From positions 744,001-808,000 of the forward strand of contig NC_047063.1 in NCBI RefSeq assembly GCF_902459465.1: a stretch of 64,000 bases of DNA, in the 5' to 3' direction. Of this stretch, positions 463 through 64,000 are shown piece by piece (positions within the stretch are counted from its first letter, which is position 1; the number at the start of each line of letters is the position of its first letter). Source of the stretch: Asterias rubens. Lineage: Eukaryota. Below the pieces are notes generated by a model. That model worked only from the letters and a program-made list of their open reading frames with translations, ran no database searches and was not told the origin of the DNA. The position numbers and the translations under genes were made by a program.

Positions 463-577
463 TTAAAGATAAGGTCAGGGCAGACAGCTTTAAATTCACA
501 ATTTAAAATCTGTCATGCAACACTATTAATTAATACTTCACCCGCTATAGAAATCAATAACCGATAAATCTACTCAC

Positions 578-3481: not shown

Positions 3482-3519
<38 letters not shown>

Positions 3520-33182: not shown

Positions 33183-34349
33183 ATGGAGGCCCAGAGGAGC
33201 CATATGACCATCTTGTTGGCTGTATGTTTGATCCTGCTGGGATTATTAAGTAGTGTTGTATCAGCTGAATGGCAAGGAGATCTGTCATCTTATCACATTG
33301 CTTCATTCAGTAATCCTCATCCTCCTAGACCTCTCAATGATCCATCTGGTAACCACAATGCTAAATTCAATCATTTCACTCTATCTGGCCCTGATGGAGC
33401 TGTGTATGTTGGAGCTGTCAACTACTTATACAGAGTGGATAGTTCATTGAATCTGCTACAGAATGTTAGTACATGTCAAGAACTAGGAGAGGATAGATGT
33501 GATACATTCACCAACTACAATAAAATCCTGATATTAGATAATCAGAATCGGTTGATTACATGTGGAAGTGAAAATGGAGGAAAATGTCAGTTCAGGAATC
33601 CAGATGATTTGACTGATGTGTTGTTTCAACCATACCCTAATGTTGCTGGTTTTGAAGAGTTGTCTACTGTAAGTTTGATTGCACCAGGAACTGATGGACC
33701 AATGGGACCAGGTCCAGATGGAGGAGATTGGTTGTATGTAGCTGTGACTTACTCCAATGAGGAGGTTGGGTATCCAGAAATCCCACCAGTCAGCAGAAGA
33801 GTCCTTAGTGCAGACGCATTGTTGGTATCCCCAGCAGGCACAGGGTTTTCTTCATTTACTGTGTTTGATACTTCCAATCTGAAGAATCCAATCCACATTA
33901 CATATGTAACTGGTTTCTCATATGATGGATTCACATACTTCATCACATTTCAAGAAGAGGATTTTTATTCCAATATCTTTGTTTCTAAAATGAACAGAGT
34001 CTGCCAGACCAGTCCAACATTTGACTCTTACACAGAAATCACCCTACAATGCCAAGGATCAGATGGTAGTGTGTACAAAATGGTACAAGCTGCTCATATT
34101 GGCCCAGCAGGTCAGGATCTTGCTGTATCATTAGGTTTGAATGCTGAGGACATGGTGTTGTATGCTGTGTTTGCTAAGAATGAAGGAGCTGATGGGACTA
34201 GTGATGTACCTATTGATCAGTCAGCATTGTGTGTGTATAAGATGAGTGATATTTTAGATGCCTTCAAGGAAGCAGTCAGGGGATGTATTCAAGATGGAGA
34301 TGACTACTCAGTGCAGCACTTGGAAGGATCCATCTGTCCATCATTATCA
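33183..34349 (+). CDS. Variable exon V1 (signal peptide + Sema domain N-terminal part), intact
   Basis: ATG at 33183 (MEAQRSHMTILLAVCLILLGLLSSVVSA, hydrophobic signal peptide). 389 open codons with plexin/Met-type Sema motifs (VYVGAVNYLYR, NYNKILILD, LITCGS, SKMNRVCQTSPTFDSYTEITLQC, SALCVYKM). Phase-0 donor gtgagt at 34350. Confidence 0.9.
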
Positions 34350-36899: not shown

Positions 36900-38072
36900 A
36901 TGGAGGCCCAGAGGAGCCACGTAACCATCTTGTTGGCCGTATGTTTGATCCTGCTGGGATTATTCTTAAGTAGCGTTGTATCAGCTGAATGGCAAGGAGC
37001 TGTGTCATCTTATCACATTGCTTCATTCAGTAATCCTCATCCTCCTAGACCTCTCAATGATCCATCAGGTAACCACAATGCTAAATTCAATCATTTCACT
37101 CTGTCTGGCCCTGATGGAGCTGTGTATGTTGGAGCTGTCAACTACTTATACAGACTGGATATGTCATTGAATCTACTACAGAATGTTAGTACATGTCAAG
37201 AACTAGGAGAGGATAAATGTGATATATTCACCAACTACAATAAAATCCTGATATTAGATAATCAATATCGGTTGATTACATGTGGAAGTGAGAATGGAGG
37301 AAAGTGTCAGTTCAGGAATCTAGATGATTTGACTGATGTGTTGTTTCAACCAGGGTCTAATATTGCTGGTTTTGGAGAGTTGTCTACTGTGAGTTTGATT
37401 GCACCAGGAACTGATGGACCAATGGGAGATGGTCCAGATGGAGGAGATTGGTTGTATGTAGCTGTGACTTATGCTACTGAAGAGGTTGGGTATACAGAAA
37501 TCCCGCCGGTCAGCAGAATAATCCTTAGTACAGATGGGTTGTTGATATCTCCATCGGGCACAGGGTATTCTTCATCTACTGCATTTGATGTTTCCTATAC
37601 TCGTGATCCATTCCAAATAACGTATGTCGTCGGTTTCTCATATGATGGATTCACATACTTCGTCACATTTCAAAAAGAGGATCTTGGTTCCAATGTCTTT
37701 GTTTCTAAAATGAACAGAGTCTGTCAGACCAGTCCAACATTTGACTCTTACACAGAAATCACCCTACAATGCCAAGGATCAGATGGTAGTGTGTACAGTT
37801 TGGTACAAACTGCTCATATTGGCCCAGCAGGTCAGGATCTTGCTGTATCATTAGGTTTGAATGCTGAGGACATGGTGTTGTATGCTGTGTTTGCTAAGAA
37901 TGAAGGAGCTGATGGGACTAGTGATGTACCTATTGATCAGTCGGCATTGTGTGTGTATAAGATGAGTGATATTTTAGATGCCTTCAAGGAAGCAGTCAGG
38001 GGATGTATTCAAGATGGAGATGGTCACGCAGTGCAGTACTTTCAAGGATCCTTCTGTCCATCCTTCCCGATG
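36900..38072 (+). CDS. Variable exon V2 (signal peptide + Sema), intact
   Basis: ATG at 36900, 391 open codons, same framework as V1, phase-0 donor gtgagt at 38073. Confidence 0.9.
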
Positions 38073-39355
38073 GTGAGTTTTCGTTTGCTGGTTACTTTCA
38101 ACCAGTTTAAACCCCATATTATGCAATGCTGTGTATGAATATGATCATTAATAATAGATGCCATCAGGGATTACAATGTTTTCAACTTGAAAACCGATAC
38201 TTTAAGTCATGTTTAATTAAAGTATGGGACAAGTTATGTTATATTAACGCCGTTATAATCGTCAGTCCAGAAAGAGGAATATAGGATCTTAAGTAAATAG
38301 GTTTTTGACGAATGATCAGCTTTAATTAAGGTAAATAAAATACATTTCCCTGTAAAGCAACACCTAACTGTTCAATGTACTGTTTTAAGTTTCCTTATAA
38401 GAACAGTCTTCTTTGAAAGATGATGCGATCACAAAAACAGCATACCACCCTCTCATGTAAAGCATGTGATTATTGCAAACGAAATCAATGTTAAAGTATC
38501 TACGACTAGGAGGAAAAATAAAAATGCTCTGACCGTCAAATAATACTTCTTGCATGCATATTGCTACGTTTTAGGGGAAAACATTGAAAGCACACGTCCA
38601 TTCTGTTGTCAGTGATAAAAATTGATTTATTGGTATATCTTAGCTGTAAAGACAAGCATTATAGTAATTTTGATTGAATAATAGACTCTGATTGTGAACG
38701 GGCACTGTCGCCCCACACCCTCCACACGCACGTGCACAAAGATCACGGTGTTTGCAAATTGCGTGACCCCTCCATATGCAATGTGCCAAAATGTAGTTGT
38801 CATCGAAAGTTTGTTCAAAATAAAATATATAATTGATGCCTGCACTCATGACTGACCTTTGCTTCCAGTTGGGTGAACAACATTGGGCCTACCTGTCATT
38901 GTGTGCATAGACTGTTTCTATTCCTTTCGTCATTTTTTCTTTTAGGCCTAGTACGCTATTTCCGTCTCGTATTATTGTTTCGACTGCCGAGTATTCTGGC
39001 TCTCTTTCGCTGAAGTTTTTAGGCCGAAATCATCAACAAAGTGTTGTTTACGGTTACTGTAGTAAGCCCGCCCGTCACGATTTCTGATTATGACTCAAAT
39101 AACTCTGGAATCGCGGAAACAACATTATCCCACCAAAAGCCAGTTTATTCACTTTAGTTTCTAGCAGACATTTCGTGAATGTTGTGCTTTTATTTGTGCT
39201 TGTTTTGTATAGTTTAAAATTAACAAAGCTACTGCAAAGGAGTTCTTAAAAAGTTTGAGAGATCTTTCTCCAGCCTTGCGTTAGTCACCATGTGCCTGAA
39301 ACTTTGTACATAGCTTTGGAAGAAACAGAAGAGAACAAGTAACTTATGTAACACT

Positions 39356-40516
39356 ATGGATGCCCAGAGGAGCCACGTAACCATCTTGTTGGCTGTATGT
39401 TTGATCCTGCTGGGATTATTAAGTTGTGTTGTATCAGCTGAATGGCAAGGAGATCTGTCATCTTATCACATTGCTTCATTCAGTAATCCTCATCCTCCTA
39501 GACCTCTCAATGATCCATCTGGTAACCACAATGCTAAATTCAATCATTTCACTCTATCTGGCCCTGATGGAGCTGCGTATGTTGGAGCTGTCAACTACTT
39601 ATACAGACTGGATAGTTCGTTGAATCTGCTACAGAATGTTAGTACATGTCAAGAACTAGGAGAGGGTAGATGTGATATATTCACCAACTACAATAAAATC
39701 CTGATATTAGATAATCAGAATCGGTTGATTACATGTGGAAGTGAGAATGAAGGAAAGTGTCAGTTCAGGAATCCAGATGATTTAACTGATGTGTTGTTTC
39801 AACCAGTGCCTAATGTTGCTGGTTTTGGAGAGTTGTCTACTGTGAGTTTGATTGCACCAGGAACTGATGGACCAATGGGAGATGGTCCAGTTGGAGGAGA
39901 CTGGTTGTATGTAGCTGTGACTTACTCCGATGAGGTTTGGTGTATCCCACCAGTCAGCAGAAGAATCCTTAGTACAGACGGATTGTTAATATCCCCAGCA
40001 CCATACCCAGGATCGTCTTCATCTGTTGCATTGGGGTTTTCTTATAATCGCAATCCATTCCCAATAACGTATGTAACTGGTTTCTCATATGATGGATTCA
40101 CATACTTCATCACTAATCAAATGGAGGATTTTGGTTCCAATGTCTTTGTTTCTAAAATAAACAGAGTCTGTCAGACCAGTCCAACATTTGACTCTTACAC
40201 AGAAATCACCCTACAATGCCAAGGATCAGATGGTAGTGTGTACAGTTTGGTACAAGCTGCTCATATTGGCCCAGCAGGTCAGGATCTTGCTGTATCATTA
40301 GGTTTGAATGCTGAAGACATGGTGTTGTATGCTGTGTTTGCTAAGAATGAAGGAGCTGATGGGACTAGTGATGTACCTATTGATCAGTCAGCATTGTGTG
40401 TGTATAAGATGAGTGATATATTAGATGCCTTCAAGGAAGCAGTCAGGGGATGTATTCAAGATGGAGATGACTACTCAGTGCAGTACTTGGAAGGATCCAT
40501 CTGTCCATCATTACCA
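39356..40516 (+). CDS. Variable exon V3 (signal peptide + Sema), intact
   Basis: ATG at 39356, 387 open codons, phase-0 donor gtgagt at 40517. Confidence 0.9.
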
Positions 40517-42705: not shown

Positions 42706-43850
42706 ATGGAGGCCCAGAGGAGCCACGTAACCATCTTGTTGGCTGAATGTTTGATTCTGCTGGGATTATTAAGTAGTGTTGTATCAGCTGAATGGCAAGG
42801 AGATCTGTCATCTTATCACATTGCTTCATTCAGTAATCCTCATCCTCCTAGACCTCTCAATGATCCATCTGGTAACCACAATGCTAAATTCAATCATTTC
42901 ACTCTATCTGGCCCTGATGGGGCTGTGTATGTTGGAGCTGTCAACTACTTATACTAATTGGATAGTTCATTGAATCTGCTACAGAATGTTAGTACATGTC
43001 AAGAACTTGGAGAGGATAGATGTTATATATTCACCAACTACTTATATAGATATTAGATAATCAGAATCGGTTGATTACATGTGGAAGTGAGAATGGAGGA
43101 AAGTGTCAGTTCAGGAATCCAGATGATTTGACTGATGTGTTGTTTCAACCAGGGCCTAATGTTGCTGGTTTTGGAGAGTTGTCTACTGTGAGTTTGATTG
43201 CACCAGGAACTGATGGACCAATGGGAGATGGTCCAGATGGAGGAGACTGGTTGTATGTAGCTGTGACTTATTCTGCTGAGGTTGGGTATAGAGCAATCCC
43301 ACCAATATCAAGGCGAATTCTTAGTGAAGGATCTTTATTGGCAGCACTTGATGGTAACACATTTTCATCAGTTGTTCCCTTTTCTACACCGATACAAATA
43401 TCGTATAGATCTGCTTTTTCGTTTGGCGGCTTCACATACTTCATCACTTCTCAAAAGGAGGATTTTGGTTCAAATTTCTTTGTTTCTAAAATGAACAGAG
43501 TATGCCAGACTAGTGAATATTTGGATTCTTACACAGAAATCACCCTACAATGCCAAGGATCAGATGGTAGTGTGTACAGTTTGGTACAAGCTGCTCATAT
43601 TGGCCCAGCAGGTCAGGATCTTGCTGTATCATTAGGTTTGAATGCTGAGGACATGGTGTTGTATGCTGTGCTTGCTAAGAATGAAGGAGCTGATGGGACT
43701 AGTGATGTACCTATTGATCAGTCAGCATTGTGTGTGTATAAGATGAGTGATATTTTAGATGCATTCAAGGAAGCAGTCAGGGGATGTATTCAAGATGGAG
43801 ATGACTACTCAGTGCAGTACTTGCAAGGATCCATCTGTCCAGCATTACCA
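42706..43850 (+). pseudogene. Variable exon V4, disabled
   Basis: Premature TAA at 42955-42957 (tac taa where other copies have tac aga). A net -4 nt change near 43041 (ttatata replaces aataaaatcct) shifts the frame. The rest is open to donor gtgagt at 43851. Confidence 0.88.
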
Positions 43851-47097: not shown

Positions 47098-48150
47098 ATG
47101 GAAGCCCAGAGGAGCCACGTAACCATCTTGTTGGCCGTATGTTTGATCCTGCTGGGATTATTTAGAGGTGTTGTATCAGCTGAATGGCAAGGAGATCTGT
47201 CATCTTATCACATTGCGTCATTCAGTAATCCTCATCCTCCTAGACCTCTCAATGATCCATCTGGTAACCACAATGCTAAATTTAATCATTTCACTCTATC
47301 TGGCCCTGATGGGGCTGTGTATGTTGGAACTGTCAACTACTTATACAGACTGGATAGTTCATTGAATCTGCTACAGAATGTTAGTACATGTCAAGAACTA
47401 GGACAGGATAGATGTGATACATTCACCAACTACAATAAAATCCTGATATTAGATAATCAGAATCGGTTGATTACATGTAGAAGTGAGAATGTAGGAAAGT
47501 GTCAGTTCAGAAATCCAGATGATTTGACTGATGTGTTGTTTCGGCCAGGTGAAGGGACAAGCGGAACAGAACAGAACGTTGCTGGTTTTGGAGAGTTGTC
47601 TACTGTGAGTTTGATTGCACCAGGAACTGATGGATCAACTGGACCAGGGCCAGATGGAGGCGACTGGTTGTATGTAGCTGTGACTTACTCCAATGAGGTT
47701 GGGTATCGACATATCCCACCAGTCAGCAGAAGAGTCCTTAGTGCAGACGCATCGTTGATATCCCCATCAGGCACAGGGTATTCTCCATTTACTGCGTTTG
47801 ATATTTCTTATAAACAAAACGCAGTCCCATTTAACTATGTATCTGGTTTCTCATATGATGGATTCACATACTTCATCACTTCTCAGAAGGAGGATTCTGG
47901 TTCCAATGTCTTTGTTTCTAAAATGAACAGAGTCTGTCAGACCAGTCCAACATTTGCCTCTTACACAGAAATCACCCTTCAATGCCAAGGATCAGGTAGT
48001 GTGTACAGCTTGGTACAAGCTGCTCATATTGGCCCAGCAGGTCAGGATCTTGCTGTATCATTAGGTTTGAATGCTGAGGACATGGTGTTGTAATATGCTG
48101 TGTTTGCTAAGAATGAAGGAGCTGATGGGACTAGTGATGTACCTATTGAT
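47098..48150 (+). pseudogene. Variable exon V5, in-frame stop, 3' end lost by fusion to V6
   Basis: ATG at 47098. A 3-nt insertion gives ttg TAA tat gct (48091-48093) versus ttg tat gct in the other copies. After ..DVPID (48150) the sequence jumps to the RLDSSL position of another V copy. Confidence 0.85.
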
Positions 48151-50269: not shown

Positions 50270-51576
50270 ATGGATGCCCAGAGGAGCCACGTAACCATCT
50301 TGTTGGCTGTACGTTTGATTCTGCTGGGATTATTAAGTAGTGATGTATCAGCTGAATGGCAAGGAGATCTGTCATCTTATCACATTGCTTCATTCAGTAA
50401 TCCTCATCCTCCTAGACCTCTCAATGATCCATCTGGTAACCACAATGCTAAATTCAATCATTTCACTCTATCTGGCCCTGATGGAGCTGTGTATGTTGGA
50501 GCTGTCAACTACTTATACAGACTGGATAGTTCATTGAATCTGCTACAGAATGTTAGTACATGTCAAGAACTAGGAGAGGAATGTGATATATTCACCAACT
50601 ATAATAAAATCCTGATATTAGATAATCAGAATCGGTTGATTACATGTGGAAGTGAGAACGAAGGAAAGTGTCAGTTCAGGAATCTAGATGATTTGACTGG
50701 TGTGTTGTTTCAACCAGGGCCTAATGTTGCTGGTTTTGGAGAGTCGTCTGTGGGTTTGATTGCACCAGGAACTGATGGACCAGTCGGACCAGGGGCCGAT
50801 TTCACAAAGATCTAAGATTGATCGTTACTGCAAATCAATCGTAGTTGCTAAGTAAAATGTGATGTCACAATACAAATCACTATGGTGATACTGACAATTT
50901 GTCTTGCGATGAATTTGATTGCTTTGTGAAATCGGCCCCAGGGCCAGATGGAGGAGATTGGTTGTATGTAGCTGTGACTTACTCCAATGAGGTTGGGTAT
51001 CAAGCAATCCCACCAGTCAGCAGAAGAATCCTTAGTAAAGAAAGGTTGTTGATATCACCATCAGGCCTGGGGGTTTCTTCATTTATTGCATTTGATGTTT
51101 CCAATCTTAAGACTCCAATCCACATTACATATGTATCTGGTTTCTCATTTGATGGTTTCACATACTTCATCACTTCTCAAGAGGAGGATTTTGGTTCCAA
51201 TATCTTTGTTTCTAAAATGAACAGAGTCTGTCAGACCAGTCCATCCTTTGACTCTTACACAGAAATCACCCTACAATGCCAAGGATCAGATGGTAGTGTG
51301 TACAGTTTGGTACAAGCTGCTCATATTGGCCCAGCAGGTCAGGATCTTGCTGTATCATTAGGTTTGAATGCTGAGGACATGGTGTTATATGCTGTGTTTG
51401 CTAAGAATGAAGGAGCTGATGGGACTAGTGATGTACCTATTGATCAGTCAGCATTGTGTGTGTATAAGATGAGTGATGTTTTAGATGCCTTCAAGGAAGC
51501 AGTCAGGGGATGTATTCAAGAAGGAGATGGTCACTCAGTGCACTACTTGGAAGGGTCATTCTGTAGTAGATTTCCA
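50270..51576 (+). pseudogene. Variable exon V7 (closest to the constant region), disrupted by a MITE
   Basis: ATG at 50270. A 146-bp insertion plus 3-bp duplication at 50793-50941 introduces TAA (50813-50815) and a frameshift. The downstream half is open to donor gtaagt at 51577. Confidence 0.88.
50793..50938. mobile_element. PIF/Harbinger-like MITE inside V7
   Basis: TIRs gggccgatttcacaaag / ctttgtgaaatcggccc; 3-bp TSD CAG. Removing it restores ggaccagggccagat as in the other V copies. Confidence 0.88.
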
Positions 51577-52140: not shown

Positions 52141-52249
52141 ATTGGTCCAGATATGTTTTTGTGTCATGTTTTTGAAGGGGACACTATAATATACAGGAAT
52201 GCTAAAGGCATCAGTGTAACAGCATCCAATGCTGTACTGGAACTATCAG
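52141..52249 (+). CDS. Alternative constant exon A (109 nt)
   Basis: tctag acceptor; IGPDMFLCHVFEGDTIIYRNAKGISVTASNAVLELS+G; donor gtacat; phase 0 to phase 1. Confidence 0.8.
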
Positions 52250-55200
52250 GTACATCAAATGAGACATCAAATTTTCTGTTCTTCTATTTCTAGGTCAGTC
52301 CAGATATGTTTCTGTGTCATCATTTTGAAAATAGTAACCCAGTATACAAGTATGCTAAAGGAATTGATGTAACTTCATCAAATGCTGTACTGGAACTTTC
52401 AGGTATTAATAAGATACTGCATTACCTAAACAATCAAAATGTTCTGGTTTCAATTTAAAAGGGCAGTTAAACATCGACTCTCATCGCAATCAAATTTTTA
52501 ACAGTCTTAAACGCTTGTTTTATTTTGACTGCTCACTTTCCTCTGTGCAATTGTATTTGATAGTTAGTCTTCTTGATACAAATTATCAGTAAGTAAATTT
52601 TAAAAATATTTAAAGGCAGTGGACACTATTGGTAATTACCCAAACAAATTATTAGCATAAACCTTACTTGGTAACGAGAGGCTGAGAGTATAAAACATTG
52701 CTATAAACGGCTCCCTCTGAAGTAACGTAGTTTTCGAGAAAGAAGTAATTTTCCATGAATTTGATTTCAAGACCTCAGAATTAGATTTTGAGGTCTCGAA
52801 ATCAAGCATCTGAAAGCACACAACTTCATGTGACAAGGGTGGTATTTTTCTCTCATAGTTATCTCGCAACTCAATTGAGTTCAAACTATCACAGGTCCGT
52901 TGTTTTATGCATATGTGAGAAGACTGTTCTTTGACAATTACCCTTAGTGTCAAGTGTCTTTAAAGTGTTGTCCCCTGTGTGTTTGCAAGTTAAATGTTTT
53001 TTTGATAGTTTTAACTTGTTCTCTTTTTTACAGGACCATAAAGCTGTTGAGCTGATATTAAGTATCCTTTAAAAATATGGTTTTTTTTTTAATAAATTAA
53101 TGTACATTGTTTTAATATTGTCATTTCAAGACACTCTGATGTCCTCCATCATTACAACTACTGAGATGACCCACACTGTAGCTATCATTGGAACTTACTA
53201 CAGTGGGGAACTTTTAAAGGTAAGTATATTAATTTTGTTAATGTATATTTCTTTCATTTGTTTCTTGCATCAATAAGAGGATGCTTCCATCTTGGCGTTT
53301 GTGCAATTGGCAGCTTCCAGACCAAATCAAATAAACAAAACTGAAATTGTTATCATCCATCACCTTTAGAAGTAATTCATTATTCTTTCCTTGGAAAATG
53401 TGGGTAGGAACTACTAGGCGGGTAAATACATTTAACGCAATTCCAAGTATACATAGAAAGTTAACACAAACAAATAAAAACTTGGGTGGGTTTAAAATAT
53501 GAAACTTTAAAACACTGCTAATTATTGACTGTTGTGGGTCTCAAGACCGGTCTCCCCCTCGGACCTTCAGGTCTTGGTCTCGGATTTCGACTACAACACT
53601 GAACGTCTAACCACTCCTTATTTACAAGTGTTTGACCATAAATTATTATTGAAAATCAACCCGCTTACAACCACAAACTTTACCGTAAAAGAATATATTT
53701 TAAAAATTTACACACAAACATGCACACGCAGCAATGTTTCCGCCTTCTGGAAACAGTGATATGGAGCAAAAGGAAGGGACAGAAAACAGACAGAAGATGA
53801 AAACATTGAACAAAGGAAAGTGATTTCAAAAGGACAAAGGAAGGGTGGGGTATAAGGACTTTGCAAGTGTCAAACACAAACTTTACAATGATGACCTGTA
53901 ACTTTGGTATAACAAATGACAGCACAAATCTATGATTCAAGATTAAACATTATCCCAGGTTAACTATTCATATTATGCAAGATGGACCCATTGTATGCCT
54001 ATCTTTAAATTGTTGTGTTACAGGTTCACATCCAGAGCAAGACCTCAGCCAGACTGTATGAAAGAGTAGACCTTGATATTACTGGATCAGTTCTTAAAGA
54101 TGTCAAGATTAATGATACAACAAGAGAGATGTACATACTCACTGAACAAAAGGTACAATATATAAAGATGCAAGGACCATGCAAATGTTATTTTTTAATT
54201 TACCCCAAGCATATAATTTGACTTCATCTTTTTAAATATGTTTTGATTTGGACTGTATAGTTTCTGAAGATGCGGTTTGAGAATTGTGGTCAGTATACAA
54301 CGTGTGAGACGTGTATTGGTACGGATGCAGAGATGGATGGAGACCCATACTGTGGCTGGTGTACTCTGCAAAGACAGTAAGTATTGTATCTTGATTGGTT
54401 AACAATGCATGTTGAGAGTTATTACATATGCAGGGAGGGATGGAAACGTCAGCTGAATTAACAAATTTGGATCACCTCAAAAATAACTCTGTATGTATAT
54501 TATTAATACCTGTTTAGATGTACCCTGTATTCTGACTGCAAGATGCCTGATGTGTCTACGCGATGGTTAGCCTACAATACTGCACAGTGTATTGAGATAA
54601 CCAATGTGGATCCTTATAACAATCTACCAATCACTGTCACAGAACAACAGGTAAGAGTAACTGCTTACTGACTTTTGCATTTCCATACAGCTGGTTGGCA
54701 CAAACAATTGCTAAACACAGGTTCTGAGTATTGCTTAGCACAAATGGACGTTCCTCCAAGATGCTATTAAGATTACATAATTGTGACTTGATGGCTTGCT
54801 GTACTGAATGTCTCCTTCAGCCTCCCCTCTTTCTCTCAAATCCACCTGTATACCAATTGTATATTTACTAGGTTACTGTGAGTGTAGAGCAGTTACCAGA
54901 CTTACTGACCAACATGACATATGAGTGTTGGTTTGGATCCTACGTATCTCAAGCTACAAAGACTAATGAGGATCTTAGATGTGTCTCCCCACCTGATAAT
55001 AGAATACCACCAATTCAACAAGGAGGTAAGTCAAACGCTAAACTAGGGCCATTTGTTGCTATTGTTGTTAAAATGAAATAAACATACAACTTTTTATGAA
55101 TGTTCCATTTTCCAGATGATGCTGTTCAGGTTACACTGAGCATCCATTCCAGTGAAACACCAGTCAGTTTTGTGGATACAAGTTTCTACTTCTATGAATG

Positions 55201-58200
55201 CTCCACTCATACTTCGTAAGAATATTTTATGTTCGCTCTTGCTTTAACTTTGATACTTCAGAAGAATATTTTCTGTTTGCTCCAGCTTTTCATATGACAC
55301 TCCAATTATGGTACGCAAAATGTCTTCATTGACTTTGGTAATGATAAAGTTTATTGAGTTCCAAATTACTGAGTTTCAAATTCTGTGATGTGGTTAAAAT
55401 TGTTGATACTTTGTCCATTAGCATAGTACACTTCTCTAACCCATAATCCCAATCATCAGCTTTGTTGTTTTGTATTTGTGTTTGTTGTAGTTGTGTATCT
55501 TGTGTTGATAGTCGATGGGCCTGTGATTGGTGTGTCTTTGAGAATAGATGCACTCATGTTAGTTCTACTTGCTCAGGAGACAACGAAATCATCATTACAG
55601 GACAAAACGTAAGATCAAACTCTATCACAAATGTAGTCTTTTCCAAATACTGATATCTAACAGTTAAACAAACTGAAGATCAAGGTGTTGTCTACAAAGA
55701 CATGAAACCATACATGAAATATGTTTTCAATAACATGTATGAGGTGTTATTGAGTTGTTCTGAAACATTTGAAGATCAATGAAAAAATGTATGTTAGTCA
55801 ATGATTTGATATTTTTTCTTTAGAATCCAGCTTTGTCTTCACCCAAGGGTCCGGGTTCCTGCCCTCAGCTGCTGGCTCAGAATACTAAAGTCCTTCTTCC
55901 CAATGGAATTGAAAGAAGTTTACAAGTCATGACTACAAATCTACCTGATCAGACCCAGGTTAGTTAGTATCTTTATTGATCAAACAGCGTTCAAAGGCAA
56001 AATGAGTTAAATTTCCGAGGCAAAAAGTGATTTTACAGCCAACACCAAGCAGAAGGATTGCAATTTTTGGTCTACTTTATGGCAATGAAACAAACTCTTT
56101 AATATACCCTGTCCTTACTCTATGAATATAAATTTAACTGTGTTAATGTATAAAGTCTTCAATGTATGAAAAAGAAAGCAAACAAACATAAGTTATGCTT
56201 ATAGAATACAGGAAGTGACTGTTGAAAATTACTATAATTAATAGTGCTCCACTTTGAAATAACAAAGCAATTAATTACTATTCCACATGATAGTTTGGTA
56301 ACAAAGAGGAGATAGTTTTCTGTGCATTTTGTAAGTGCTACATCATGAAGTATCCCATTTATTGTGTGAATTACACCAACAACAAAAAAACACTTCAGAA
56401 ATAACAGCAATCACAGCCTAAGATTACAAAAACCCAGACATTGGAGAGAAGGAACTAAGAGATAGAAAAACAAAATGAAGTAACTTCATAGGAAAAACTA
56501 AAACAAAAGGCCCAGAATGAGTAAGTACTGAAATAAATTGTCAACATCTCGTGTTGCTGAGCACTTTGAAAGGAGCGGCAGTTTTAGCATAGCATAGGTA
56601 TAGTACAAATGCTGGTCTGAGACAAAGAAAGGATACAGAGAAGAAAAACAAAATTACAAAATAAAAAGGCCCTCATAAAAAAAACCATTTGAAAAGTGTT
56701 GTATCAATAGCTTCATGTTGTTTTTATCAAATCTTTTAAAACTCCCCAGAACAAAATACCTAACTACCTGTCACATTGTCTCTCTATCTGAAATTACAGG
56801 GGTCTGGCATTAAAGACAAATTATGGTGTAAAAGTATTTATACTAAGCTACCTGTTCAAACAGAATTGATTTGACTTCTGTGAAAATAAAAACAGCACAA
56901 ACCTTCTTAGAATGAACGCCTTGTAACTAACATTTGTCTCTTCATCTCTTAGACTTCTAGCTTTGAATGTAGCTTTGATATCGAGGGAATACGTCAGACT
57001 ACAACGGCACAGCGAAATGATGATACCATCATGTGTGACATGAAAGCTGTAAGTTTTCTCAAGCCATTTCGCAGAATTATTTGAAATTGGAAAGCCAAAG
57101 TATCATTATTGAATCAGACGCCAAGAGTTGAGTTGAACTTTGTTTGATATCAACCCATTTGTACTCCACAGTATACCTACACTTCCACTGATGAAGCAGA
57201 GCTGATTGTGAAACTGACCATTGAATGGACAGACACCAGTAATAACCCTCACATTCTAGATGACTTATTCAGCAATAAAGGTGAGTTTGAGTCAAGGATG
57301 TGGGGTGGGGATACAGGCACTTCCATACACAAAAGAGTCTAACTTATAGAATTTTACCCTAAGTAAGCTGTGGTCAAGTGGTTAGACTGCAGGACTTGCA
57401 ATCACAAGGTTGTGGGTTCGATTCCCCCAGTTAACCGCTGATTTCACAATGACTAGAATAAATATTGTCGTCTAGTTAATGAATCAAAATTTCTTGATTT
57501 GTGTAATTCATAATCATAGACGTTAAACCAATGTTTGTGAGAGAGAAATTGGCTGTTGCCAGCTTGGTGTTTATATCCCTTGTGGGAGTTGGCCAAGTTC
57601 CCTTGATGGGAAGATCATTCAAACAAACAAACAAACAAAGACCCTAGCATACAGTAGCTAGGATCCCATAAGGGGTATGTTGCTGACTGAGTTCTCTCTG
57701 GACTGTAATGGTTTTGTTTAGTACAAAAAAAATTGGGCCATCTAGCATTACAATATAAAAAACCTAACAATCGTAAGATAAGTTGATTTTGATCATGAGA
57801 TGCCTTCCAACCCAACCTGTTCCCTCCAGCATTCTAATCGGAGACAAAGGTAACCTTTCTAAAGCATCTTTCTTTTAATGGTTTATAAATAAGACATGCA
57901 AAGAAAGATTTTAAACTTGTACTTTTTGCTACAGCAACACTTTACAAGTGTGGAGTATTGAAGCCAGATTGTAGTCGGTGTGTTACTGCCAGGCCAGAGC
58001 TGGAGTGTGTTTGGTGTAATGCTTTGTGTGAACTAAGAGAGTCTTGTACAACAGCGGAAGGAGAGTGGGTTACCCACAATAATAACGCCAACTGCCCTGA
58101 TCCAATCCTCCAAGGGGTGAGTAGATATAATATAAGCTTCTGATTACAACTATGGAGTAACTGGCGATGTCAACTGACATGACCCTATCATCCAAGAAGC

Positions 58201-61200
58201 AAGTAGATACCAAGTACATTGATTTTGACAACTAGGTGAGGGTCTGTACTATTTTGTTAACGACACTGCGAGACTAGTTAAAGAAGGAAACACCTGCAAT
58301 GAATGTGGAGGAATGTGACCCATACCCGAAACATTTTTCTGTAACTGTAAGTGACTTGTTGACTTGATTTTGTTTTGATTGTTTAGGTGTATCCATTGAG
58401 TGGACCAATAGAAGGTAACACCATAGTATCTGTAATGGGTACAGATATTGGCACAGGGTTCCATACTGTACTGAATGTGATGATTGGAGACCAACAGTGC
58501 CATCTGGATGGACTGGAAGCCTATTATGAAATAGGCACCAGGTAAGAAGTTTTACAAAACCATCTTAGATGGACTAGAGGCTTACTTTGTACTCGGTTGG
58601 AGGTAAGTGTTTGATCACACTGTTGAACGCTGAGTTTGTGTAATCTTTTGTTTGTTTGTTTATTTGTTTATAGAGGTGTAGGTGTTTGTTTGTTTGTTTG
58701 TTTGTTTGTTTGTTTGTTTGTTTGTTTTTTAGAGAGGGGTGTCTTCACAGCCACAGCTTAGCCATTTTATTTTACCATTGTGATCACTTTGTTCTTAAAA
58801 AGTTAATATATTTATTATTGTGGATTAGCGGGATTTGAAACCTCACATTGTCCTTTTTGTTCGACTCCAGCTGCACCAGCATTGTAAACAAAATAATTAT
58901 GGTATAACAAATGAAAGATATTTCTAACAAGACGTTTTATAGATTCTTCAGTTATGTAAAAAAGAAATATAATCTTACCTTATTCCACAGTGTAAGTTGC
59001 CTAACTCAATCAAGAGTTGAAAGTGTTGTGCCGGTATCTCTTACAGTCAGGGGAGGTGATGGGACAACACTACAGGAAAGCAAAGGAAATGTCAACTTTC
59101 AATATAGGGTAAGTTTGATTACAACTCTGATGGGGTCTGAGTGTCTGTAAAACTTGGAACTGTTGAAAATAAATCAACATTAAGTTTTGAAATAAAAGTC
59201 CATTCAACATGGGATCTATTTTCTATTTTCTAGTCCTAGATTGCATTTCAATCAATCGCTCAAGATTATTTGAAAACAAGATACAAAAAATAAGTGTTTC
59301 TTTTCCAATGAGATCAATATAACAATTGCTTGTTGACAATTAGCAGGACACATGGTCTGCTCGATGTTTAGTGTCTACTTTATTTGTTTTTTGTGATTCT
59401 GATTTTCCTGCCAGGTTCCATCTATTACAAGTTTCAGTCCTCGTTTTGGACCAGCAGCTGGTGGGACTCGTTTAACAATCAACGGAATGGCTCTAAATAC
59501 AGGACGGAATATTCAGGCATTCATTGGTGATAAAGCTTGCAATATAAAAAGGCAAGTAAAGACAAAACAATTAAGTCATAGAGGTTGAGCCTGTTCGTCA
59601 GAGATTTGTTTTGATTAGTCTTTTAAATTGAGGTCTGATCAGAATCACACCATTAGTCAGTTGGTTAAGAAAAGTCTTTTATAGTGATGTGTCATTGGTT
59701 GTATATTTTTGATTTACTTCACAGCCCAGTGACAGAGACTGAAGCAGTGTGCACAAGCTCTGAGGGGTCTGTTGGGCAGACAGAAGTTCTCAAGATGTCT
59801 TTTGATGGATCAGATAAAACAAGCGAGGTGTACACTTTCAGCGACAACCCGGTCATTACTGAAGTCAGTCCAACCACCAGTATATATTCGTGAGTACATC
59901 TACAAACAATAGTTGTTAAAGACAGAGGACACTATTGGTAATTGTCAAAGACTAGTCTTCTCACTTGGTGTATCTCAACATATACAAACAAAATCAGACC
60001 TGTGAAAATTTGAGCTCAATTGGTCGTCGAAGTTGCGAGATAACAATGAAAGAAAAAACACCCTTGTCACACGAAGTTGTGTGCGTTTAGATGGTTGATT
60101 TTGAGACCTCAAATTCTAAACTTGAGGTCTCAAAATCAAATTCGTGGAAATTTACTTCTTTCTCGAAAAACAACGCCACTTCAGAGGGAGACGTTTCTCA
60201 CAATGTTTTATACTATCAACCTCTCCCCATTACTTGTTACCAAGTGAGGTTTTATGGTGATAATTATTTTGAGTAATTACCAATAGTGTCCTATGCCTTT
60301 AATGACACTATATTTTTCTGTTGAAATTTTTCAATTGACCACAATCTTCAATTTGTGTCTTATAAGGCTGCAGTTTCACAAGTAAGTTGAAGCTAAATGG
60401 GTCAACAAATTGGAAATCTCATTGAAAGCAATGAAAAATTTAAATGTAAAAATAACCTCATTATTTCCTAATCAGATTAGTTTAGCTACTTTTATCCTGC
60501 AGTTGTTTACCCTTTGATTTTATTGTCAATACTCAGTGGCGGTCGGGAGATGGTTGTCAGAGGGACTCATCTAGACACTGCCCAGATGGCTTCACTTGTT
60601 GTTACAGTTGCTTCTCAAATCTATAAAAGATCTATTGGCAGTGAGGGACTCAACATTAATGAGTTTGTGGAGGTGAGTCAACATAAAAATTATACTATAA
60701 CATTTTCCCATCTTACATCTCGACAATTTCAAAGATTAAATGTTAATCACAACAGGACTTTTAACAAATAGTTGTTTTACAAATTTTGTTTTTCAAGAGT
60801 TGTGCTGTGGAAGGCTCAGAGTTCATGCGCTGTACAACTCCCAATATAACATCAGCCGTAAGCAGATCTCAATCCAAACATACTGTGACATTTGGCTTCA
60901 TTATGGACGGTGTGAGTGACCTCTTAACGTGGTCAGAAGACAACGATGTTGACTTGGAGTTCTTTCCTGATCCAGAGTATGATGAGTTTGAAAACAATTT
61001 ATATGACAAGATGGACAATTTGTTGAAAATCAAGGTAAAGTAATGCTCACGGATTCTAAAACTGGAAAGTATAGTTTCCTTATACCTAGTGGTTTAAGAT
61101 CTACAAAATAACTTTAAACTGCGTTGCTGTCATATTGTTAAGGGTTTCATATTTGTTTATTTTCTTCAAAATTTGTACAACGTGTTTATGATTTGAGTTT

Positions 61201-64000
61201 ACAGCTAAAAGAGTTGTGTGTTTTTTCCAACAAAGACTGGTTCAACCAGCCATTTCAATTATCAGTGCAAGGATTTCTTCGGTTTTCTTTTTTTTTGTCA
61301 TGTAAATGAATCCCTTGCCATTTTTATTGTTGTCTTGAAAAAATAGTGTTCTATCTTCATTTATTGGTATACTGTTTATTTAAAGGGTAAGTTTATCAAC
61401 AAGGCAATCACTGAATCAGAAATCATCATTTATGTTGGACCAGTGAGAAGTGACGTAACCTTCATTGAAGAAACAGCCCTTGGTTGTATTTTACCCAAGG
61501 AGCAACCACCTGCAGGGGACTTCACCGGCCAAGACAAAGAGAGAGGTCTTCCTGTGGTCTGGGTAAGTCTTAAGAGAAACCTCTGTTGCCATAAAGAAAC
61601 AACCATCTGAACTACAATTCATGAGCCAAGACAAAGAGAGAGCGCTCCAGAAGAAACCTCTCTGTTGCTATTTATTCATGAAACAACCATCTGCCTAGAA
61701 CTTCAAGGGTCAAAACAAATGCAGAGGACTCCTCGTAGTCTGGGTAAGTCTTAAAAAAAATCTCAGTTGTGATCTACCAAATAAGAAACAACCATCTGAC
61801 AATGAGTTATTGCATTAAGACACATAGACAGGGCTTTCTTAAGTCTGGGCAAGTCGTAACACAAATCTTAGTTTTAAGTTAACACATTGTAGAATGAAAG
61901 AACCATTACAGAGTGCTTTCTGCATCTTGTAAGACAAAACTCACTTGGAACTCACTTGAGAAATAACCTCCTTATAAGAAGACTTTATGAAGTAAGATAA
62001 AGGGGTGAGATGACTCAAATCTCAGTTGTACTTATTCTGTGCAATTCTTAACATATTTTAATCTCCTTTTCAGGTGGTTCACAGCAACCTTGAGTTCCGC
62101 ATTGGTTACATCAAATATAGTTCAGCCATTTCAACTATTACTATTCTAGCGGTTATCGGAGCAGTGACTTTCATCATCTTGGTCTGCATAGTTATAGTCC
62201 TGACGATTAGGCTGAAGAGAGCCAGGCGAGATGCTGATCTTCTGGTCTTAAAGAAAGACCTTCTTGAAGATGTTAAGAAAGGTCAGAATTAAAGTTCACA
62301 GAATTTACTTTATTGATTATATGACCAGGGGACAATTTTTTAGTTGAAGCTGATAGTGATATATGCAGACAATTTGTGCTAAGCTAGGTTTCTCTGCTAA
62401 AAAGCACAAAGAAGTAGTAAATCAGTGACAAACATCGGCCCAAAAGCTGTTAAGCAGTTTTCTCTGCTAAGCAAAAAGAGCAATAAAAAAAAAAGATTGG
62501 GGCACCAGTTGCCACAACAACTTTATGAGATGTTGGCTGGCTACCTGTTTCTACTGAGCAAGTTTTATGTTCTAAGTAAGTTACAGTTCCAAAGCGGCTG
62601 TGCCTCACAGGGCAAATGAAGCTTTTAATAAAGATAATCAGTTTATCACATCCACATTGAACAGGATCATACTTTAATAACAATTTGAAAAACAGGACTC
62701 TCCCAGAGAAAATTTGACATTCTCCGATTGACAAGTGACGTTGAAGAGAGTGGGATGCCATTTGTGAGTCACCGTGACTATGCTACTAACATGCTGTTCA
62801 TTGGACAAGAGGTTCGACCAACCACAACAGATCAAGAGGTAACATTGATCAACACAAGAGACTGCAAGATCCTCTGAATCAGAGACCTGTCATTAAGTCC
62901 GATGAAGTAGGATCTTGAGTAATAATTTAATAATCTATGAACTTATTATTGCGCTCTCTCCAGGACCAGCCTGTTCGAGAGCGCATAACAATTTAACACA
63001 ATACCAGTAAAAAAAATTTAAATTATGAAAATTAATCCATACGAAAACAATCAAATGCGAAATTGCATAAAAAATCCATTAAAAAGTTACAGTTATCCAT
63101 TAAAAAAGTTACAGCAAATAACAAAAATCCATATCTCAAGTCTATACTCCCAAGGGTCAGGTGCAGGGCCTAATTTCATAGAGCTACTCTAGGCAGAAAG
63201 TTCTCTTGTAAGCAGAGAACACTGCTTACAAAATCCCCGCTTAGCAAGAATGAGCAGGAAAGCAGTCACAAATTGTATGCGATAATAGTATTTTGGCTGG
63301 TAACTTTATTCTGGTAAGCATAATTTAGTTTTGCTCAGCTTATTTTTGTGCTAAAGCAGCTCTATAAAAATGGGCCCTGTTTCTAGAGTCCTTAATAAAA
63401 GTGAATCTGACGTCAGGTTGCCAGACCACTTGACTTATTTATAAACTCTTTCTCAGGAACCACAGTTGACAACAAACCATCACATGCTAAATATAACTTT
63501 TGCTGCAAATCTTTATCCTGACCAGTAATTCTACTCATGACTTAGTCCTTTGAATTCCTGTTTTGAAAATCTTCAAAAGTGGTGACACCAAACACCAAGG
63601 GCCAATTTCACAAAAAGCTTTGTGTGTGAGAATCTTATTAATTACTCAGCACAGTGTAATGATGCAATTCAATTCACACCTAGATGTACTCTAGTGTTTT
63701 GTGAAATTGAACGCAAGGACTCAACAAAAGGAACAACACCAAATCCAAAGTATTTACTATATAACCCCTTCCAAAGAAACAGTAAAGTTAGAGCAAAATG
63801 CAAACAGCAAACAAACCTCACCAAATAAAGGAAATACAGAAATTTATCAGAGTGATCAACATTGTTGCACCTTTAACTGTTGAATTTAAAATTTGATGCT
63901 TAGGAACCATATTGCAGTTTGTCTAAAAATCATTCATTTTTCATTCTGTGCATAGTACGGTGAACATGCTATGGTTGAAGAAGCCATGATGATGTTCTCT
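52141..64000 (+). CDS. Plexin-family receptor, constant region (Sema C-terminus, PSI-TIG-PSI-TIG-PSI, 4 IPT, TM, start of plexin-type cytoplasmic region); runs off the window
   Basis: Exon chain read by hand, all phases consistent: 52141-52249 (A) or 52294-52402 (B), 53131-53219, 54024-54152, 54261-54376 (PSI: CGQYTTCETC..DPYCGWC), 54518-54650, 54872-55025, 55116-55215, 55491-55608 (PSI: CVSCVDSRWACDWC), 55824-55958, 56953-57048, 57172-57280, 57935-58116 (PSI: CSRCVTARPELECVWC), 58387-58541 (IPT: VYPLSGPIEGNT), 58991-59108, 59415-59551 (IPT: FSPRFGPAAGGTRLTING), 59725-59889, 60537-60672, 60798-61034, 61386-61562, 62074-62281 (TM: ITILAVIGAVTFIILVCIVIVLTI then RLKRARR), 62696-62838 (DILRLTSDVEESGMPFVSHRDYATNMLF, like plexin DINELTSDLD..GIPFLDYRTYAMRVLF), and 63956 to window end (YGEHAMVEEAMMMFS). 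Total to 62838 is 2946 nt = 982 codons with no stop. Subfamily cannot be assigned by eye. Confidence 0.92.
52294..52402 (+). CDS. Alternative constant exon B (109 nt), paralog of exon A
   Basis: tttctag acceptor; VSPDMFLCHHFENSNPVYKYAKGIDVTSSNAVLELS+G; donor gtatta; same length and phase as A; only 44 nt downstream of A. Confidence 0.8.
52614..52959 (+). mobile_element. Kolobok-like MITE in a constant-region intron
   Basis: ttaa|aggcagtggacac..agtgtct|ttaa. Confidence 0.8.
57361..57480 (+). mobile_element. tRNA-derived SINE-like head
   Basis: tggtcaagtggttag (A box) and gggttcgattccc (B box) with no convincing acceptor stem; intronic. Confidence 0.5.
58683..58726. repeat. (GTTT)n microsatellite
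   Basis: Direct reading. Confidence 0.95.
59920..60298 (-). mobile_element. Kolobok-like MITE, reverse orientation
   Basis: TTAA flanks; internal sequence is the reverse complement of the 36157 family. Confidence 0.8.
63166..63377. mobile_element. GGGCC-terminal MITE (Harbinger-like)
   Basis: Imperfect TIRs gggcctaatttcatagagct / agctctataaaaatgggccc; similar termini near 16088-16333 and 23618-23875. TSD not confirmed. Confidence 0.55.

What the first reader, a model, noticed from the sequence alone, without database searches (positions are those of the whole stretch)
33183..62838. Plexin locus with clustered variable Sema exons and a single constant region (protocadherin/sDscam-like architecture)
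Seen: seven tandem copies of a signal-peptide+Sema exon (V6 is 5'-truncated). All except fused V5 end in a phase-0 gt(g/a)agt donor at the same protein position. No constant-exon homologs are visible in the spacers, and a single 982+ codon constant chain begins in phase 0 at 52141/52294. The inverted paralog shows the same exon type splicing to exon A in an ordinary one-V gene. Established: clustered protocadherins, UGT1 and chelicerate sDscam make isoform repertoires from variable 5' exons joined to shared constant exons, whereas the plexins I know have one Sema coding unit per gene. Inference: this locus makes several receptors with different ligand-binding heads on one signalling body (3 intact V x 2 A/B = 6 isoforms in this haplotype, plus the paralog), possibly for self/non-self, immune, gamete or neuronal recognition. 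I do not recall this being described for plexins but could not search the literature.
Basis: partly seen in the sequence, partly recalled or inferred. Interest (0 to 1): 0.95.

Follow-up and report, generated by a model that had tools for sequence, protein, structure and literature searches.

The report
Sea-star plexin with alternative Sema exons
A sea-star (Asterias rubens) plexin receptor gene has a row of seven interchangeable first exons, three of them intact, each encoding most of the ligand-binding head, in front of one shared receptor body; this layout is known from protocadherins, and I found no paper describing it for plexins.

Summary
Window 33183-51576 holds seven tandem copies of a plexin first coding exon (signal peptide plus about 390 residues of the Sema domain).

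- V1-V3 are intact.
- V4 has a 4-nt deletion.
- V5 has an inserted TAA and is fused to the 5'-truncated V6.
- V7 carries a 149-nt MITE.

All free copies end in a phase-0 GT(G/A)AGT donor. The spacers hold no constant-exon homologs. One constant chain follows. It starts with two 109-nt exons, A and B, that are 44 nt apart.

The window is Asterias rubens chromosome LR699093.1. In A. amurensis, three tandem relatives each carry three intact V exons and an A/B pair. RefSeq isoforms there join different V exons, and either A or B, to an identical body. An Acanthaster planci gene has two alternative V exons.

All 13 indel runs among intact V exons are in frame, against 3 of 36 in the spacers. Hypervariable islands sit in a homogenised framework.

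Direct RNA proof at this locus is missing: the gene was almost silent in the runs I could lay. Promoter choice, per-cell usage and biological role remain untested. I found no paper describing this.

The parts
33183..34349 (+). V1: intact variable first coding exon (signal peptide plus N-terminal ~389 aa of the Sema domain); phase-0 GTGAGT donor after 34349
   Evidence: (Pfam Sema)
36900..38072 (+). V2: intact variable exon, one codon longer at its 3' end; GTGAGT donor
   Evidence: the NCBI model P0003 uses this exon
38946..38951 (+). Acceptor plus GCC TAG. This is the end of the NCBI 392-aa V2 model, which joins the V2 donor to a mini-exon upstream of V3. It could be a cryptic or non-productive splice.
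39356..40516 (+). V3: intact variable exon; GTGAGT donor
42706..43850 (+). V4: variable exon disabled by a 4-nt deletion at 43042; the donor is kept
47098..48150 (+). V5: variable exon with an in-frame TAA inserted at 48091-48093. It has lost its 3' end and donor through fusion to V6.
48151..49071 (+). V6: 5'-truncated variable exon (starts at codon 84) fused to V5; GTGAGT donor
50270..51576 (+). V7: the variable exon nearest the constant region. It is broken by a 149-nt MITE-like insertion at ~50789-50937. GTAAGT donor.
   Evidence: very high repeat depth at 50800-50999
32816..33182 (+). Upstream region of V1. It stands for the conserved block in front of every V exon. The motif A(C/A)AAAGCT(A/G) lies 115-161 nt before each of the six ATGs, at 33052, 36781, 39223, 42545, 46983 and 50137. 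This is a candidate promoter or leader.
   Evidence: no transcription start data
52141..52249 (+). Exon A, 109 nt, the first alternative constant-side exon. It encodes part of the blade-5 extrusion of the Sema domain.
52294..52402 (+). Exon B, 109 nt, a duplicate of A placed 44 nt downstream. Its features point to mutually exclusive use.
   Evidence: A. amurensis isoforms X1/X2; 36-44-nt gaps in three relatives
53131..53219 (+). Exon C, the first exon shared by all predicted isoforms (rest of the Sema domain)
54015..62838 (+). Remaining constant exons inside the window: end of Sema, PSI and IPT/TIG domains, the transmembrane helix at ~62074-62283 and the start of the cytoplasmic domain at 62689-62838. 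The gene runs on beyond the window.
   Evidence: Pfam list of the NCBI 2233-aa product
575..11744 (-). Inverted paralog: one V exon (11744-10575), one A-like exon (10017-~9909) and further constant exons. It runs off the window start.

Best explanation
This is a plexin gene of the echinoderm-specific 'plexin-B-like' expansion. Its first coding exon has been multiplied into a tandem array, so it most likely works as a variable-first-exon cluster.

Proposed mechanism, in steps:
1. Transcription starts at the conserved upstream block of one V exon.
2. That exon's phase-0 donor is spliced to exon A or exon B. Only one of the two can be used, because they lie 44 nt apart and each is 109 nt long; using both would shift the reading frame.
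3. Downstream V exons lie inside the first intron and are removed with it.
4. The result is a set of receptors with the same PSI/IPT stalk, transmembrane helix and GAP domain. They differ in a hypervariable stretch of the Sema propeller (V residues ~190-265, around blades 3-4) and in the V tail and A/B segment of the blade-5 extrusion.

In this A. rubens haplotype only V1-V3 are intact, so up to six productive isoforms are possible. V4-V7 are dead copies left by rapid birth-and-death turnover.

What is shown: the anatomy, selection on the reading frame, the island/framework pattern, the same layout in relatives, and RefSeq isoform models in two other species. What is inferred: actual V1-V3 to A/B splicing in A. 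rubens, one promoter per V exon, and differences in ligand specificity.
For: - Anatomy.
- Identity: the window is A. rubens LR699093.1, and NCBI calls a 2233-aa product with Sema, PSI, TIG, Plexin_cytopl and RBD domains. An AF2 model of the head has pLDDT 85 and matches plexin Sema-PSI structures at TM 0.78.
- Relatives: three tandem A. amurensis genes each have 3 V exons plus an A/B pair.
- RefSeq isoforms of one A. amurensis gene, XP_071784051/52/53, are V@7674+B, V@7674+A and V@12440+B. They are identical from about residue 450 onward. A second gene uses V@4104+A and V@6528+B.
- A. planci: two V exons 73% identical to each other, both intact, are used by isoforms X1 and X3.
- Selection on the frame: 9 of 9 A. 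amurensis V exons are open. All 13 indel runs among intact V exons are multiples of 3, against 3 of 36 in the spacers.
- Divergence pattern: framework pS is 0.04-0.07, and island pS is 0.18-0.53 within each gene's V set (mean dS about 0.8 over all 13 V exons). Exons are more diverged than their flanking spacers: 93.2% against 94.9%, and 90.9% against 96.1%.
- Upstream elements: conserved blocks lie before every V exon in both spacer classes and in both species.
- A/B pair: the gap is 36-44 nt in all four genes.
Against: - No RNA junction was seen at this locus. In about 1.6-1.9 Gb sampled from each of three A. rubens RNA-seq runs, plus one contig set, exons A and B had depth 0-0.17 and exon C about 1. 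No V-to-A/B joint or informative loose end was listed.
- Reads on V6 and V7 carry fixed differences. They lie mostly in framework stretches shared with other copies, so they say nothing about this gene.
- No junction-spanning ORF from transcript assemblies turned up in the protein collections.
- Four of the seven V exons, including the three nearest the constant region, are dead.
- NCBI annotates V1-V4 here as separate short genes and starts the plexin gene at the defective V5.
- The RefSeq isoforms are gene models, and I could not inspect the evidence behind them.
- The constant region is only 83-85% identical to each A. amurensis relative, so there is no clean one-to-one ortholog.
Confidence: 0.65

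Rival explanations
1. Spare pseudo-exons. The 5' exon has been tandemly duplicated by unequal recombination, but each gene uses only one V exon. The others are unused copies, kept looking intact for a while by gene conversion from the working copy and then decaying.
For: - Four of the seven V copies here are broken, by three different kinds of lesion.
- The framework is strongly homogenised, with pS 0.04-0.07. Conversion could therefore passively preserve open frames.
- No transcripts were detected.
- Copy number differs between sister species, 7 against 3.
Against: - The island segments escape homogenisation: pS is 0.18-0.53 within each gene's V set and mean dS is about 0.8 over all 13 V exons. 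Yet all their indels are in frame, 13 of 13 against 3 of 36 in the spacers.
- All nine A. amurensis V exons and both A. planci V exons (73% identical to each other) are open and keep their donors.
- RefSeq models use at least two V exons in each of three genes.
- In this haplotype the proximal copies are the dead ones, so a single-V gene would have to use a distal V exon anyway.
Confidence: 0.2
2. Stand-alone genes. V1-V4 are independent short genes encoding secreted Sema fragments of about 390-430 aa, as NCBI annotates them. They end by intron read-through or at a small downstream exon.
For: - NCBI calls V1 (427 aa), V2 (392 aa, spliced to a GCC-TAG mini-exon at 38946), V3 (425 aa) and V4 (294 aa) as separate genes.
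- Each V exon has its own ATG, signal peptide and conserved upstream block.
Against: - The exon ends inside the blade-5 extrusion. Such a product lacks strand 5d and blades 6-7 of the seven-bladed propeller, so it should not fold.
- The read-through tails are unconserved between copies.
- Every copy keeps a phase-0 consensus donor at the same codon.
- Identical 'V-only' models in Patiria and S. purpuratus turn out to be the first exon of an ordinary gene whose annotation was split.
Confidence: 0.05
3. Assembly artefact. The array, or part of it, comes from haplotype stacking or mis-joining of repeats in the A. rubens assembly, and some lesions (for example the 4-nt deletion in V4) are consensus errors.
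For: - Tandem repeats of about 3 kb are hard to assemble and polish.
- The V5/V6 fusion and the single-indel defect in V4 are the kind of feature that errors can create.
- I could not lay DNA long reads.
Against: - The copies differ by 5-15% and belong to two spacer classes, which is far more than allelic divergence.
- The island segments differ by in-frame indels.
- An independent assembly of A. amurensis shows the same multi-V plus A/B layout three times.
- The V7 insertion is a bona fide high-copy repeat with terminal inverted repeats.
Confidence: 0.07

Closest known systems
Vertebrate clustered protocadherins (Pcdh alpha/gamma)
   Same: - A tandem array of large variable 5' exons, each encoding the signal peptide and the recognition part of the ectodomain.
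- Each variable exon has its own conserved upstream element.
- No constant exons lie between the variable exons, and one shared set of constant exons follows.
- Gene conversion homogenises part of each variable exon, while specificity-determining segments stay diverse.
   Different: - Here the variable exon encodes only about three quarters of one domain, the Sema propeller, which constant exons complete. In Pcdh the variable exon encodes the whole ectodomain, the transmembrane helix and part of the tail.
- The array is small, 3 to 7 exons.
- Promoter choice, stochastic expression and homophilic binding are untested. Plexins are semaphorin receptors, not homophilic adhesion molecules.
Chelicerate sDscam (Yue et al. 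2016, PMC4835542)
   Same: - It is an invertebrate receptor family with tandemly arrayed 5' cassettes joined to constant exons through alternative promoters.
- There are several paralogous clusters per genome.
- The variable part is the N-terminal recognition domain.
   Different: - The fold is Ig, not Sema.
- sDscam has tens of cassettes per cluster.
- Its isoform use was shown by RNA data and its homophilic specificity was shown by experiment. Neither is available here.
UGT1A locus
   Same: Alternative first exons with their own promoters encode the substrate-binding half of the protein. They splice to common exons that encode the rest.
   Different: UGT1A is an enzyme, not a receptor. It shows no hypervariable island pattern and no mutually exclusive exon pair.
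Echinoderm Plexin-B / Met-LP expansion (Junqueira Alves et al. 2019, PMC6374515)
   Same: - It is the same protein family: the best full-length matches outside Asterias are A. planci and Patiria 'plexin-B-like' and Met-LP proteins.
- That paper reports eight Plexin-B and four Met-LP genes in A. planci and notes tandem duplication.
   Different: The paper counts genes. It contains none of the words isoform, exon, splic- or alternative. It does not describe multiple first exons per gene or the A/B pair.
Sterically enforced mutually exclusive exon pairs, where the intron is too short to splice
   Same: - Exons A and B are duplicates of equal length (109 nt, not a multiple of 3).
- They are separated by 36-44 nt in four genes.
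- RefSeq isoforms contain one or the other.
   Different: Mutual exclusion has not been shown by reads at this locus.

Membership tests
Plexin | N-terminal seven-bladed Sema domain | tested here: met
   Pfam Sema on V1-V3. PDB sequence matches to plexin A and plexin B Sema domains with E down to 2e-52. The AF2 model of the relative's head has pLDDT 85 and a Foldseek TM of 0.78 to Drosophila PlexA and mouse PlxnA2.
Plexin | PSI and IPT/TIG repeats, one transmembrane helix, and a cytoplasmic plexin GAP domain with RBD | tested here: met
   The window exons cover residues 390-1375 of a full-length relative, including the transmembrane helix. The NCBI 2233-aa product of this gene carries PSI, TIG_plexin, TIG, Plexin_cytopl and Plexin_RBD. 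The cytoplasmic part lies mostly beyond the window.
Variable-first-exon cluster (Pcdh / UGT1A / sDscam type) | Tandem variable 5' exons, each with an ATG and a donor, with no constant exons between them and one constant region downstream | tested here: met
Variable-first-exon cluster (Pcdh / UGT1A / sDscam type) | Each variable exon has its own promoter | tested here: inconclusive
   Conserved blocks and motifs lie 115-262 nt upstream of every V ATG, in two spacer classes and two species. No transcription start data are available.
Variable-first-exon cluster (Pcdh / UGT1A / sDscam type) | Transcripts join different variable exons to the same constant exons | tested here: inconclusive
   For: RefSeq isoform models in A. 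amurensis (two genes) and A. planci. At this locus, read laying found no joints because the gene was almost unexpressed.
Variable-first-exon cluster (Pcdh / UGT1A / sDscam type) | Stochastic or cell-specific choice of variable exon, giving each cell an identity | not testable with these tools
   This needs single-cell or in situ data.
Mutually exclusive exon pair | Duplicated exons of equal length where using both or neither breaks the frame, separated by an intron too short to splice | tested here: met
   109 nt each with a 44-nt gap. The gap is 36-44 nt in three A. amurensis genes. A. amurensis isoforms X1 and X2 differ only in this exon.
Echinoderm Plexin-B clade (Junqueira Alves 2019) | Groups phylogenetically with A. 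planci Plexin-B1-B8 and Met-LP rather than with Plexin-A | tested here: inconclusive
   The best non-Asterias matches are A. planci and Patiria plexin-B-like and Met-LP proteins, at 52-56% identity over the V exon. No tree was built against the paper's named genes.

The most novel reading that the evidence does not exclude
Sea stars may run a diversified recognition-receptor system built on plexins. It would consist of a fast-turnover tandem family of plexin-B-like genes, each with several alternative Sema-head exons and an alternative A/B extrusion exon. Hypervariable 'cassette' islands at the presumed ligand-binding edge would be kept diverse and shuffled by gene conversion. The system would be read out by promoter choice, giving cells or individuals distinct receptor repertoires. 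Possible uses are immune, allorecognition or gamete recognition, perhaps paired with the expanded echinoderm-specific secreted semaphorins.
Probability: 0.15. Interest if true: 0.9.

Novelty: new variant of a known kind. Interest (0 to 1): 0.7.

Why it matters
Plexins are textbook one-head, one-gene guidance receptors. A plexin locus that offers several ligand-binding heads on one signalling body would be a further independent use, after protocadherins, UGT1A and chelicerate sDscam, of the variable-first-exon strategy. It would be the first on a Sema propeller.

The locus combines three layers of variation:
- alternative first exons;
- a sterically exclusive exon pair;
- hypervariable islands in a homogenised framework.

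Together with gene-family expansion, these make it a tractable case for asking how receptor diversity evolves outside the Ig and cadherin folds. It could also show what the large echinoderm semaphorin/plexin expansion is for.

On the practical side, genome annotators currently split these loci into 'plexin-like' fragments. V1-V4 are called as separate genes here, and similar splits occur in Patiria and the sea urchin. This inflates gene counts for the family.

Tried and rejected
1. RNA read laying on 48000-53999. Exons A, B and C were essentially uncovered and no junctions were found. This is uninformative rather than negative.

2. Share of words in RNA runs for V1-V3. Only 0.15-0.16 was held, and framework words are shared by all V copies, so nothing can be concluded.

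3. Search for junction-spanning transcript ORFs in the 5.8-billion-protein collection, with V1 and with a junction-centred query. None came from Asterias. The one spliced fragment (P0270) starts after the junction and belongs to another species.

4. V-only short 'plexin-like' models in Patiria, Amphiura and S. purpuratus as evidence for deep conservation of multi-V arrays. I rejected this: the three loci fetched (L002, L009, L008) each show one V exon followed by constant exons, so these are split annotations.

5. P0004 (462 aa) as a possible transcript. It is a 3.1-kb genomic scaffold with intron read-through.

6. One-to-one orthology between the V exons of the two Asterias species. There is none: identities are 83-95% in all directions and the exons are mosaics. 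The constant region also has no clean ortholog, at 83-85% to each relative.

7. Classical positive selection. Island pN/pS is 0.5-0.8, not above 1. High pS in the islands points instead to old segments moved around by conversion.

8. Residue-level mapping of the islands onto the published semaphorin-binding interface. The primary structure papers were not held. I can only say that the island spans strands 3d-4b and their loops in the model. The V tail and the start of A/B align near mouse PlxnA2 A396, an interface residue according to PMC4308982. That alignment is approximate.

9. A link to the coelomocyte 'plexin-A4' surface marker of A. rubens (PMC13409769). That protein is XP_033645926.1 (1862 aa), a different plexin.


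Full report
**What is in the sequence**

The window is Asterias rubens chromosome LR699093.1, at about 744-808 kb (locus L001 position 10001 equals window 42706).

tblastn with the first copy finds seven + strand copies of one exon type and one inverted copy. Each full copy starts with an ATG and a signal peptide, and runs for about 387-391 codons of the Sema domain (Pfam Sema). Each ends at a consensus donor in phase 0 at the same protein position: GTGAGT in V1, V2, V3, V4 and V6, and GTAAGT in V7.

V1 (33183-34349), V2 (36900-38072) and V3 (39356-40516) are open throughout. The other four are disabled:
- V4 has a 4-nt deletion at 43042.
- V5 has a TAA inserted in frame at 48091-48093. At 48151 it runs into V6.
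- V6 lacks its first 83 codons.
- V7 is split by a 149-nt insertion with terminal inverted repeats at about 50789-50937. Read and contig depth over this insertion is far above that of the flanks, so it is a high-copy MITE-like element.

**The constant part**

A full-length relative (P0241) maps onto the window from 52141 to 62838. It covers residues 390-1375 without a gap, and no constant-exon match lies in the spacers 34350-51900.

The chain opens with two duplicated exons: A at 52141-52249 and B at 52294-52402. Each is 109 nt and has AG and GT sites, and they are separated by 44 nt. Exon C follows at 53131-53219. Because 109 is not a multiple of three and 44 nt is very short for an intron, using exactly one of the two is the only productive choice.

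The - strand paralog has one V exon (11744-10575), one A-like exon and the usual following exons.

**The array is not an artefact**

The copies differ by 5-15% in nucleotides and fall into two spacer classes. They carry different lesions. An independent assembly of the sister species shows the same layout three times (see below). I could not lay long DNA reads, so the exact copy number and the single-indel lesions remain unverified.

**RNA at this locus**

It was dominated by three repeats. Depth on exons A and B was 0-0.17, and on exon C about 1. No V-to-A/B joints or useful loose ends were listed.

The few reads on V6 and V7 carry fixed differences: 48296 A>G, 48879 A>G, and a TAG codon inserted after 50580. 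They lie mainly in stretches that are nearly identical in all V copies. They probably come from other copies or alleles.

The gene was simply not expressed in what I could sample. This test neither supports nor refutes the interpretation. Protein-collection searches found no transcript-derived ORF crossing the junction.

**Evidence from relatives**

In Asterias amurensis (CP134953.1, 29.17-29.30 Mb) at least three tandem plexin genes each carry three V exons, then an A/B pair, then the constant exons. All nine V exons are open. The A/B gap is 36-44 nt in each gene.

RefSeq gives isoforms for these genes:
- First gene: X1 is the first V exon plus the B-type exon. X2 is the same V exon plus the A-type exon. 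X3 is the third V exon plus the B-type exon. The three proteins are identical from about residue 450 to the end.
- Second gene: X2 uses its first V exon with the A-type exon, and X1 uses its second V exon with the B-type exon.

In Acanthaster planci, one plexin-B-like gene has two V exons 10 kb apart. They are 73% identical to each other and both are intact, in front of a single next exon. Isoforms X1 and X3 use one each.

These are gene models whose supporting reads I could not see.

By contrast, the many short 'V-only' plexin-like models in Patiria miniata and Strongylocentrotus purpuratus are not extra V exons. Each of the three loci I fetched shows one V exon followed by the rest of a gene that the annotation had split. 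So the large first exon is ancestral, while the multi-V state is shown only for Asterias (four genes) and Acanthaster (one gene).

**Selection**

Among 13 intact V exons, all 13 distinct indel runs are multiples of three. In the spacers of the same duplication units, only 3 of 36 are.

The exons consist of a framework that is almost identical across copies, genes and species, with pS 0.04-0.07. Within it sits a hypervariable island at V residues ~190-265, where pS is 0.18-0.53 within each gene's V set (0.31 among V1-V3 here) and mean dS is about 0.8 over all 13 V exons. There is also a variable tail of about 20 residues.

Island pN/pS is 0.5-0.8, so simple positive selection is not demonstrated. 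Instead, old divergent segments persist and are exchanged patchwise while the rest is homogenised.

The exons are more diverged than their own flanking spacers: V1/V3 exons are 93.2% identical against 94.9% for the spacer, and V2/V5 exons are 90.9% against 96.1%. This is the opposite of what is expected for ordinary exons or for decaying copies. Clustered protocadherins show a comparable contrast between homogenised and diversity-retaining segments; that comparison rests on my own knowledge, not on a test here.

**Where the variable parts lie**

An AlphaFold model of the relative's head has pLDDT 85 and pTM 0.89. It matches plexin Sema-PSI structures at TM 0.78.

By strand order, the island spans the end of blade 3 to the start of blade 4, including a long, low-confidence loop. 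The V exon ends inside the blade-5 extrusion. Exons A and B encode the remainder of the extrusion and lead into strand 5d.

By approximate sequence alignment, the V tail and the start of A/B lie near mouse PlxnA2 A396. That surface residue contacts Sema6A directly, and its mutation abolishes binding (PMC4308982). This suggests, but does not show, that the variable parts touch the ligand.

**Upstream regions**

Every V exon is preceded by a conserved block. The motif A(C/A)AAAGCT(A/G) lies 115-161 nt before all six ATGs, and these account for six of its seven + strand occurrences in the window. TAGTTTCYNGC lies 201-262 nt before five of the ATGs, and those five are its only occurrences. The blocks are shared by both spacer classes and both species. 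They are candidate promoters, but no start-site data exist.

**Annotation and alternatives**

NCBI calls V1-V4 as separate short genes and starts the plexin gene at the defective V5. The V2 model joins the V2 donor to a GCC-TAG mini-exon at 38946.

A stand-alone product would lack strand 5d and blades 6-7 of the propeller, and the read-through tails are not conserved. I therefore regard these models as artefacts or non-productive transcripts.

The pseudo-exon rival, in which only one V exon is ever used, fits the four dead copies here. It does not fit the in-frame indels, the nine intact copies in the sister species, or the old intact pair in Acanthaster.

**Family context and literature**

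The protein belongs to the echinoderm-specific plexin-B-like/Met-LP expansion described for A. planci (PMC6374515). That paper does not mention exons, isoforms or splicing.

Full-text searches found no description of clustered variable Sema exons in plexins. The searches combined plexin with variable or alternative first exons, protocadherin, Asterias and isoforms.

The closest described systems are clustered protocadherins, UGT1A and chelicerate sDscam (PMC4835542).

The constant region is only 83-85% identical to each A. amurensis relative. Copy number differs (7 against 3 V exons). Together these point to rapid birth-and-death evolution.

**Verdict**

The interpretation as a variable-first-exon plexin locus is the best explanation (about 0.65). 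It rests on anatomy, frame conservation, the island/framework pattern and isoform models in two other sea stars. It still lacks direct junction reads in A. rubens.

Functional ideas about self/non-self or immune recognition are open.

It is a new variant of a known kind of genomic device, on a protein family where I did not find it described.

Noticed in passing
window 50789-50937: A 149-nt MITE-like element with terminal inverted repeats (GGGGCCGATTTCACAAAG ... CTTTGTGAAATCGGCCCC) is inserted in V7. Its depth in RNA runs and contigs is far above that of the flanks, so it belongs to a high-copy, transcribed repeat family.
   Followed up: partly
window 52610-52963, 36153-36452, 46374-46671, 60006-60302 (inverted); also 49400-49800: A repeat family has four copies in the window: two in V spacers and two in constant-region introns. 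A second repeat lies at 49400-49800. Both have very high RNA read depth (hundreds to thousands) with many internal joints, so they swamp read-laying on this locus.
   Followed up: no
window 4866-5245 (-) vs 54851-55226 (+): A 380-nt patch is 96% identical between the inverted paralog and this gene's constant region. The neighbouring matches are only 79-81%. This suggests recent gene conversion between the two inverted genes.
   Followed up: no
window 44163-44546: An ORF-like stretch in the V4-V5 spacer translates to tandem repeats of about 10 residues (PMFRHPYVPT-like). It is probably a minisatellite.
   Followed up: no
window 38946-38951: A strong polypyrimidine/AG acceptor is followed by GCC TAG, 405 nt upstream of the V3 ATG. 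NCBI's V2 model uses it. It may be a cryptic exon that terminates read-through from V2.
   Followed up: partly
window 851-1813 vs 8963-9901 (inverted repeat on the same strand pair): Two ~1-kb segments, 79% identical and in inverted orientation, lie inside the introns of the inverted paralog.
   Followed up: no
Patiria miniata JADOBP010000024.1 (e.g. L002) and the list: About twenty Met-LP-type receptors (plexin ectodomain plus tyrosine kinase, ~1450-1710 aa) lie on one Patiria chromosome. Their heads are 74-92% identical to each other. Several are split by the annotation into a V-only model and a kinase-bearing model.
   Followed up: partly
Patiria miniata L009 14122-18668: A 1197-aa OTU/DUF6589 ORF, probably a transposon, sits in the first intron of a plexin-B-like gene, between its V exon and the rest of the gene. 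This caused the annotation to split the gene.
   Followed up: no
window 47098 onward (NCBI 2233-aa product): The RefSeq/GenBank plexin model for this gene starts at the defective, fused V5/V6 exon. It must therefore skip an in-frame TAA and carry a partly duplicated Sema domain. The model is probably wrong at its 5' end.
   Followed up: partly
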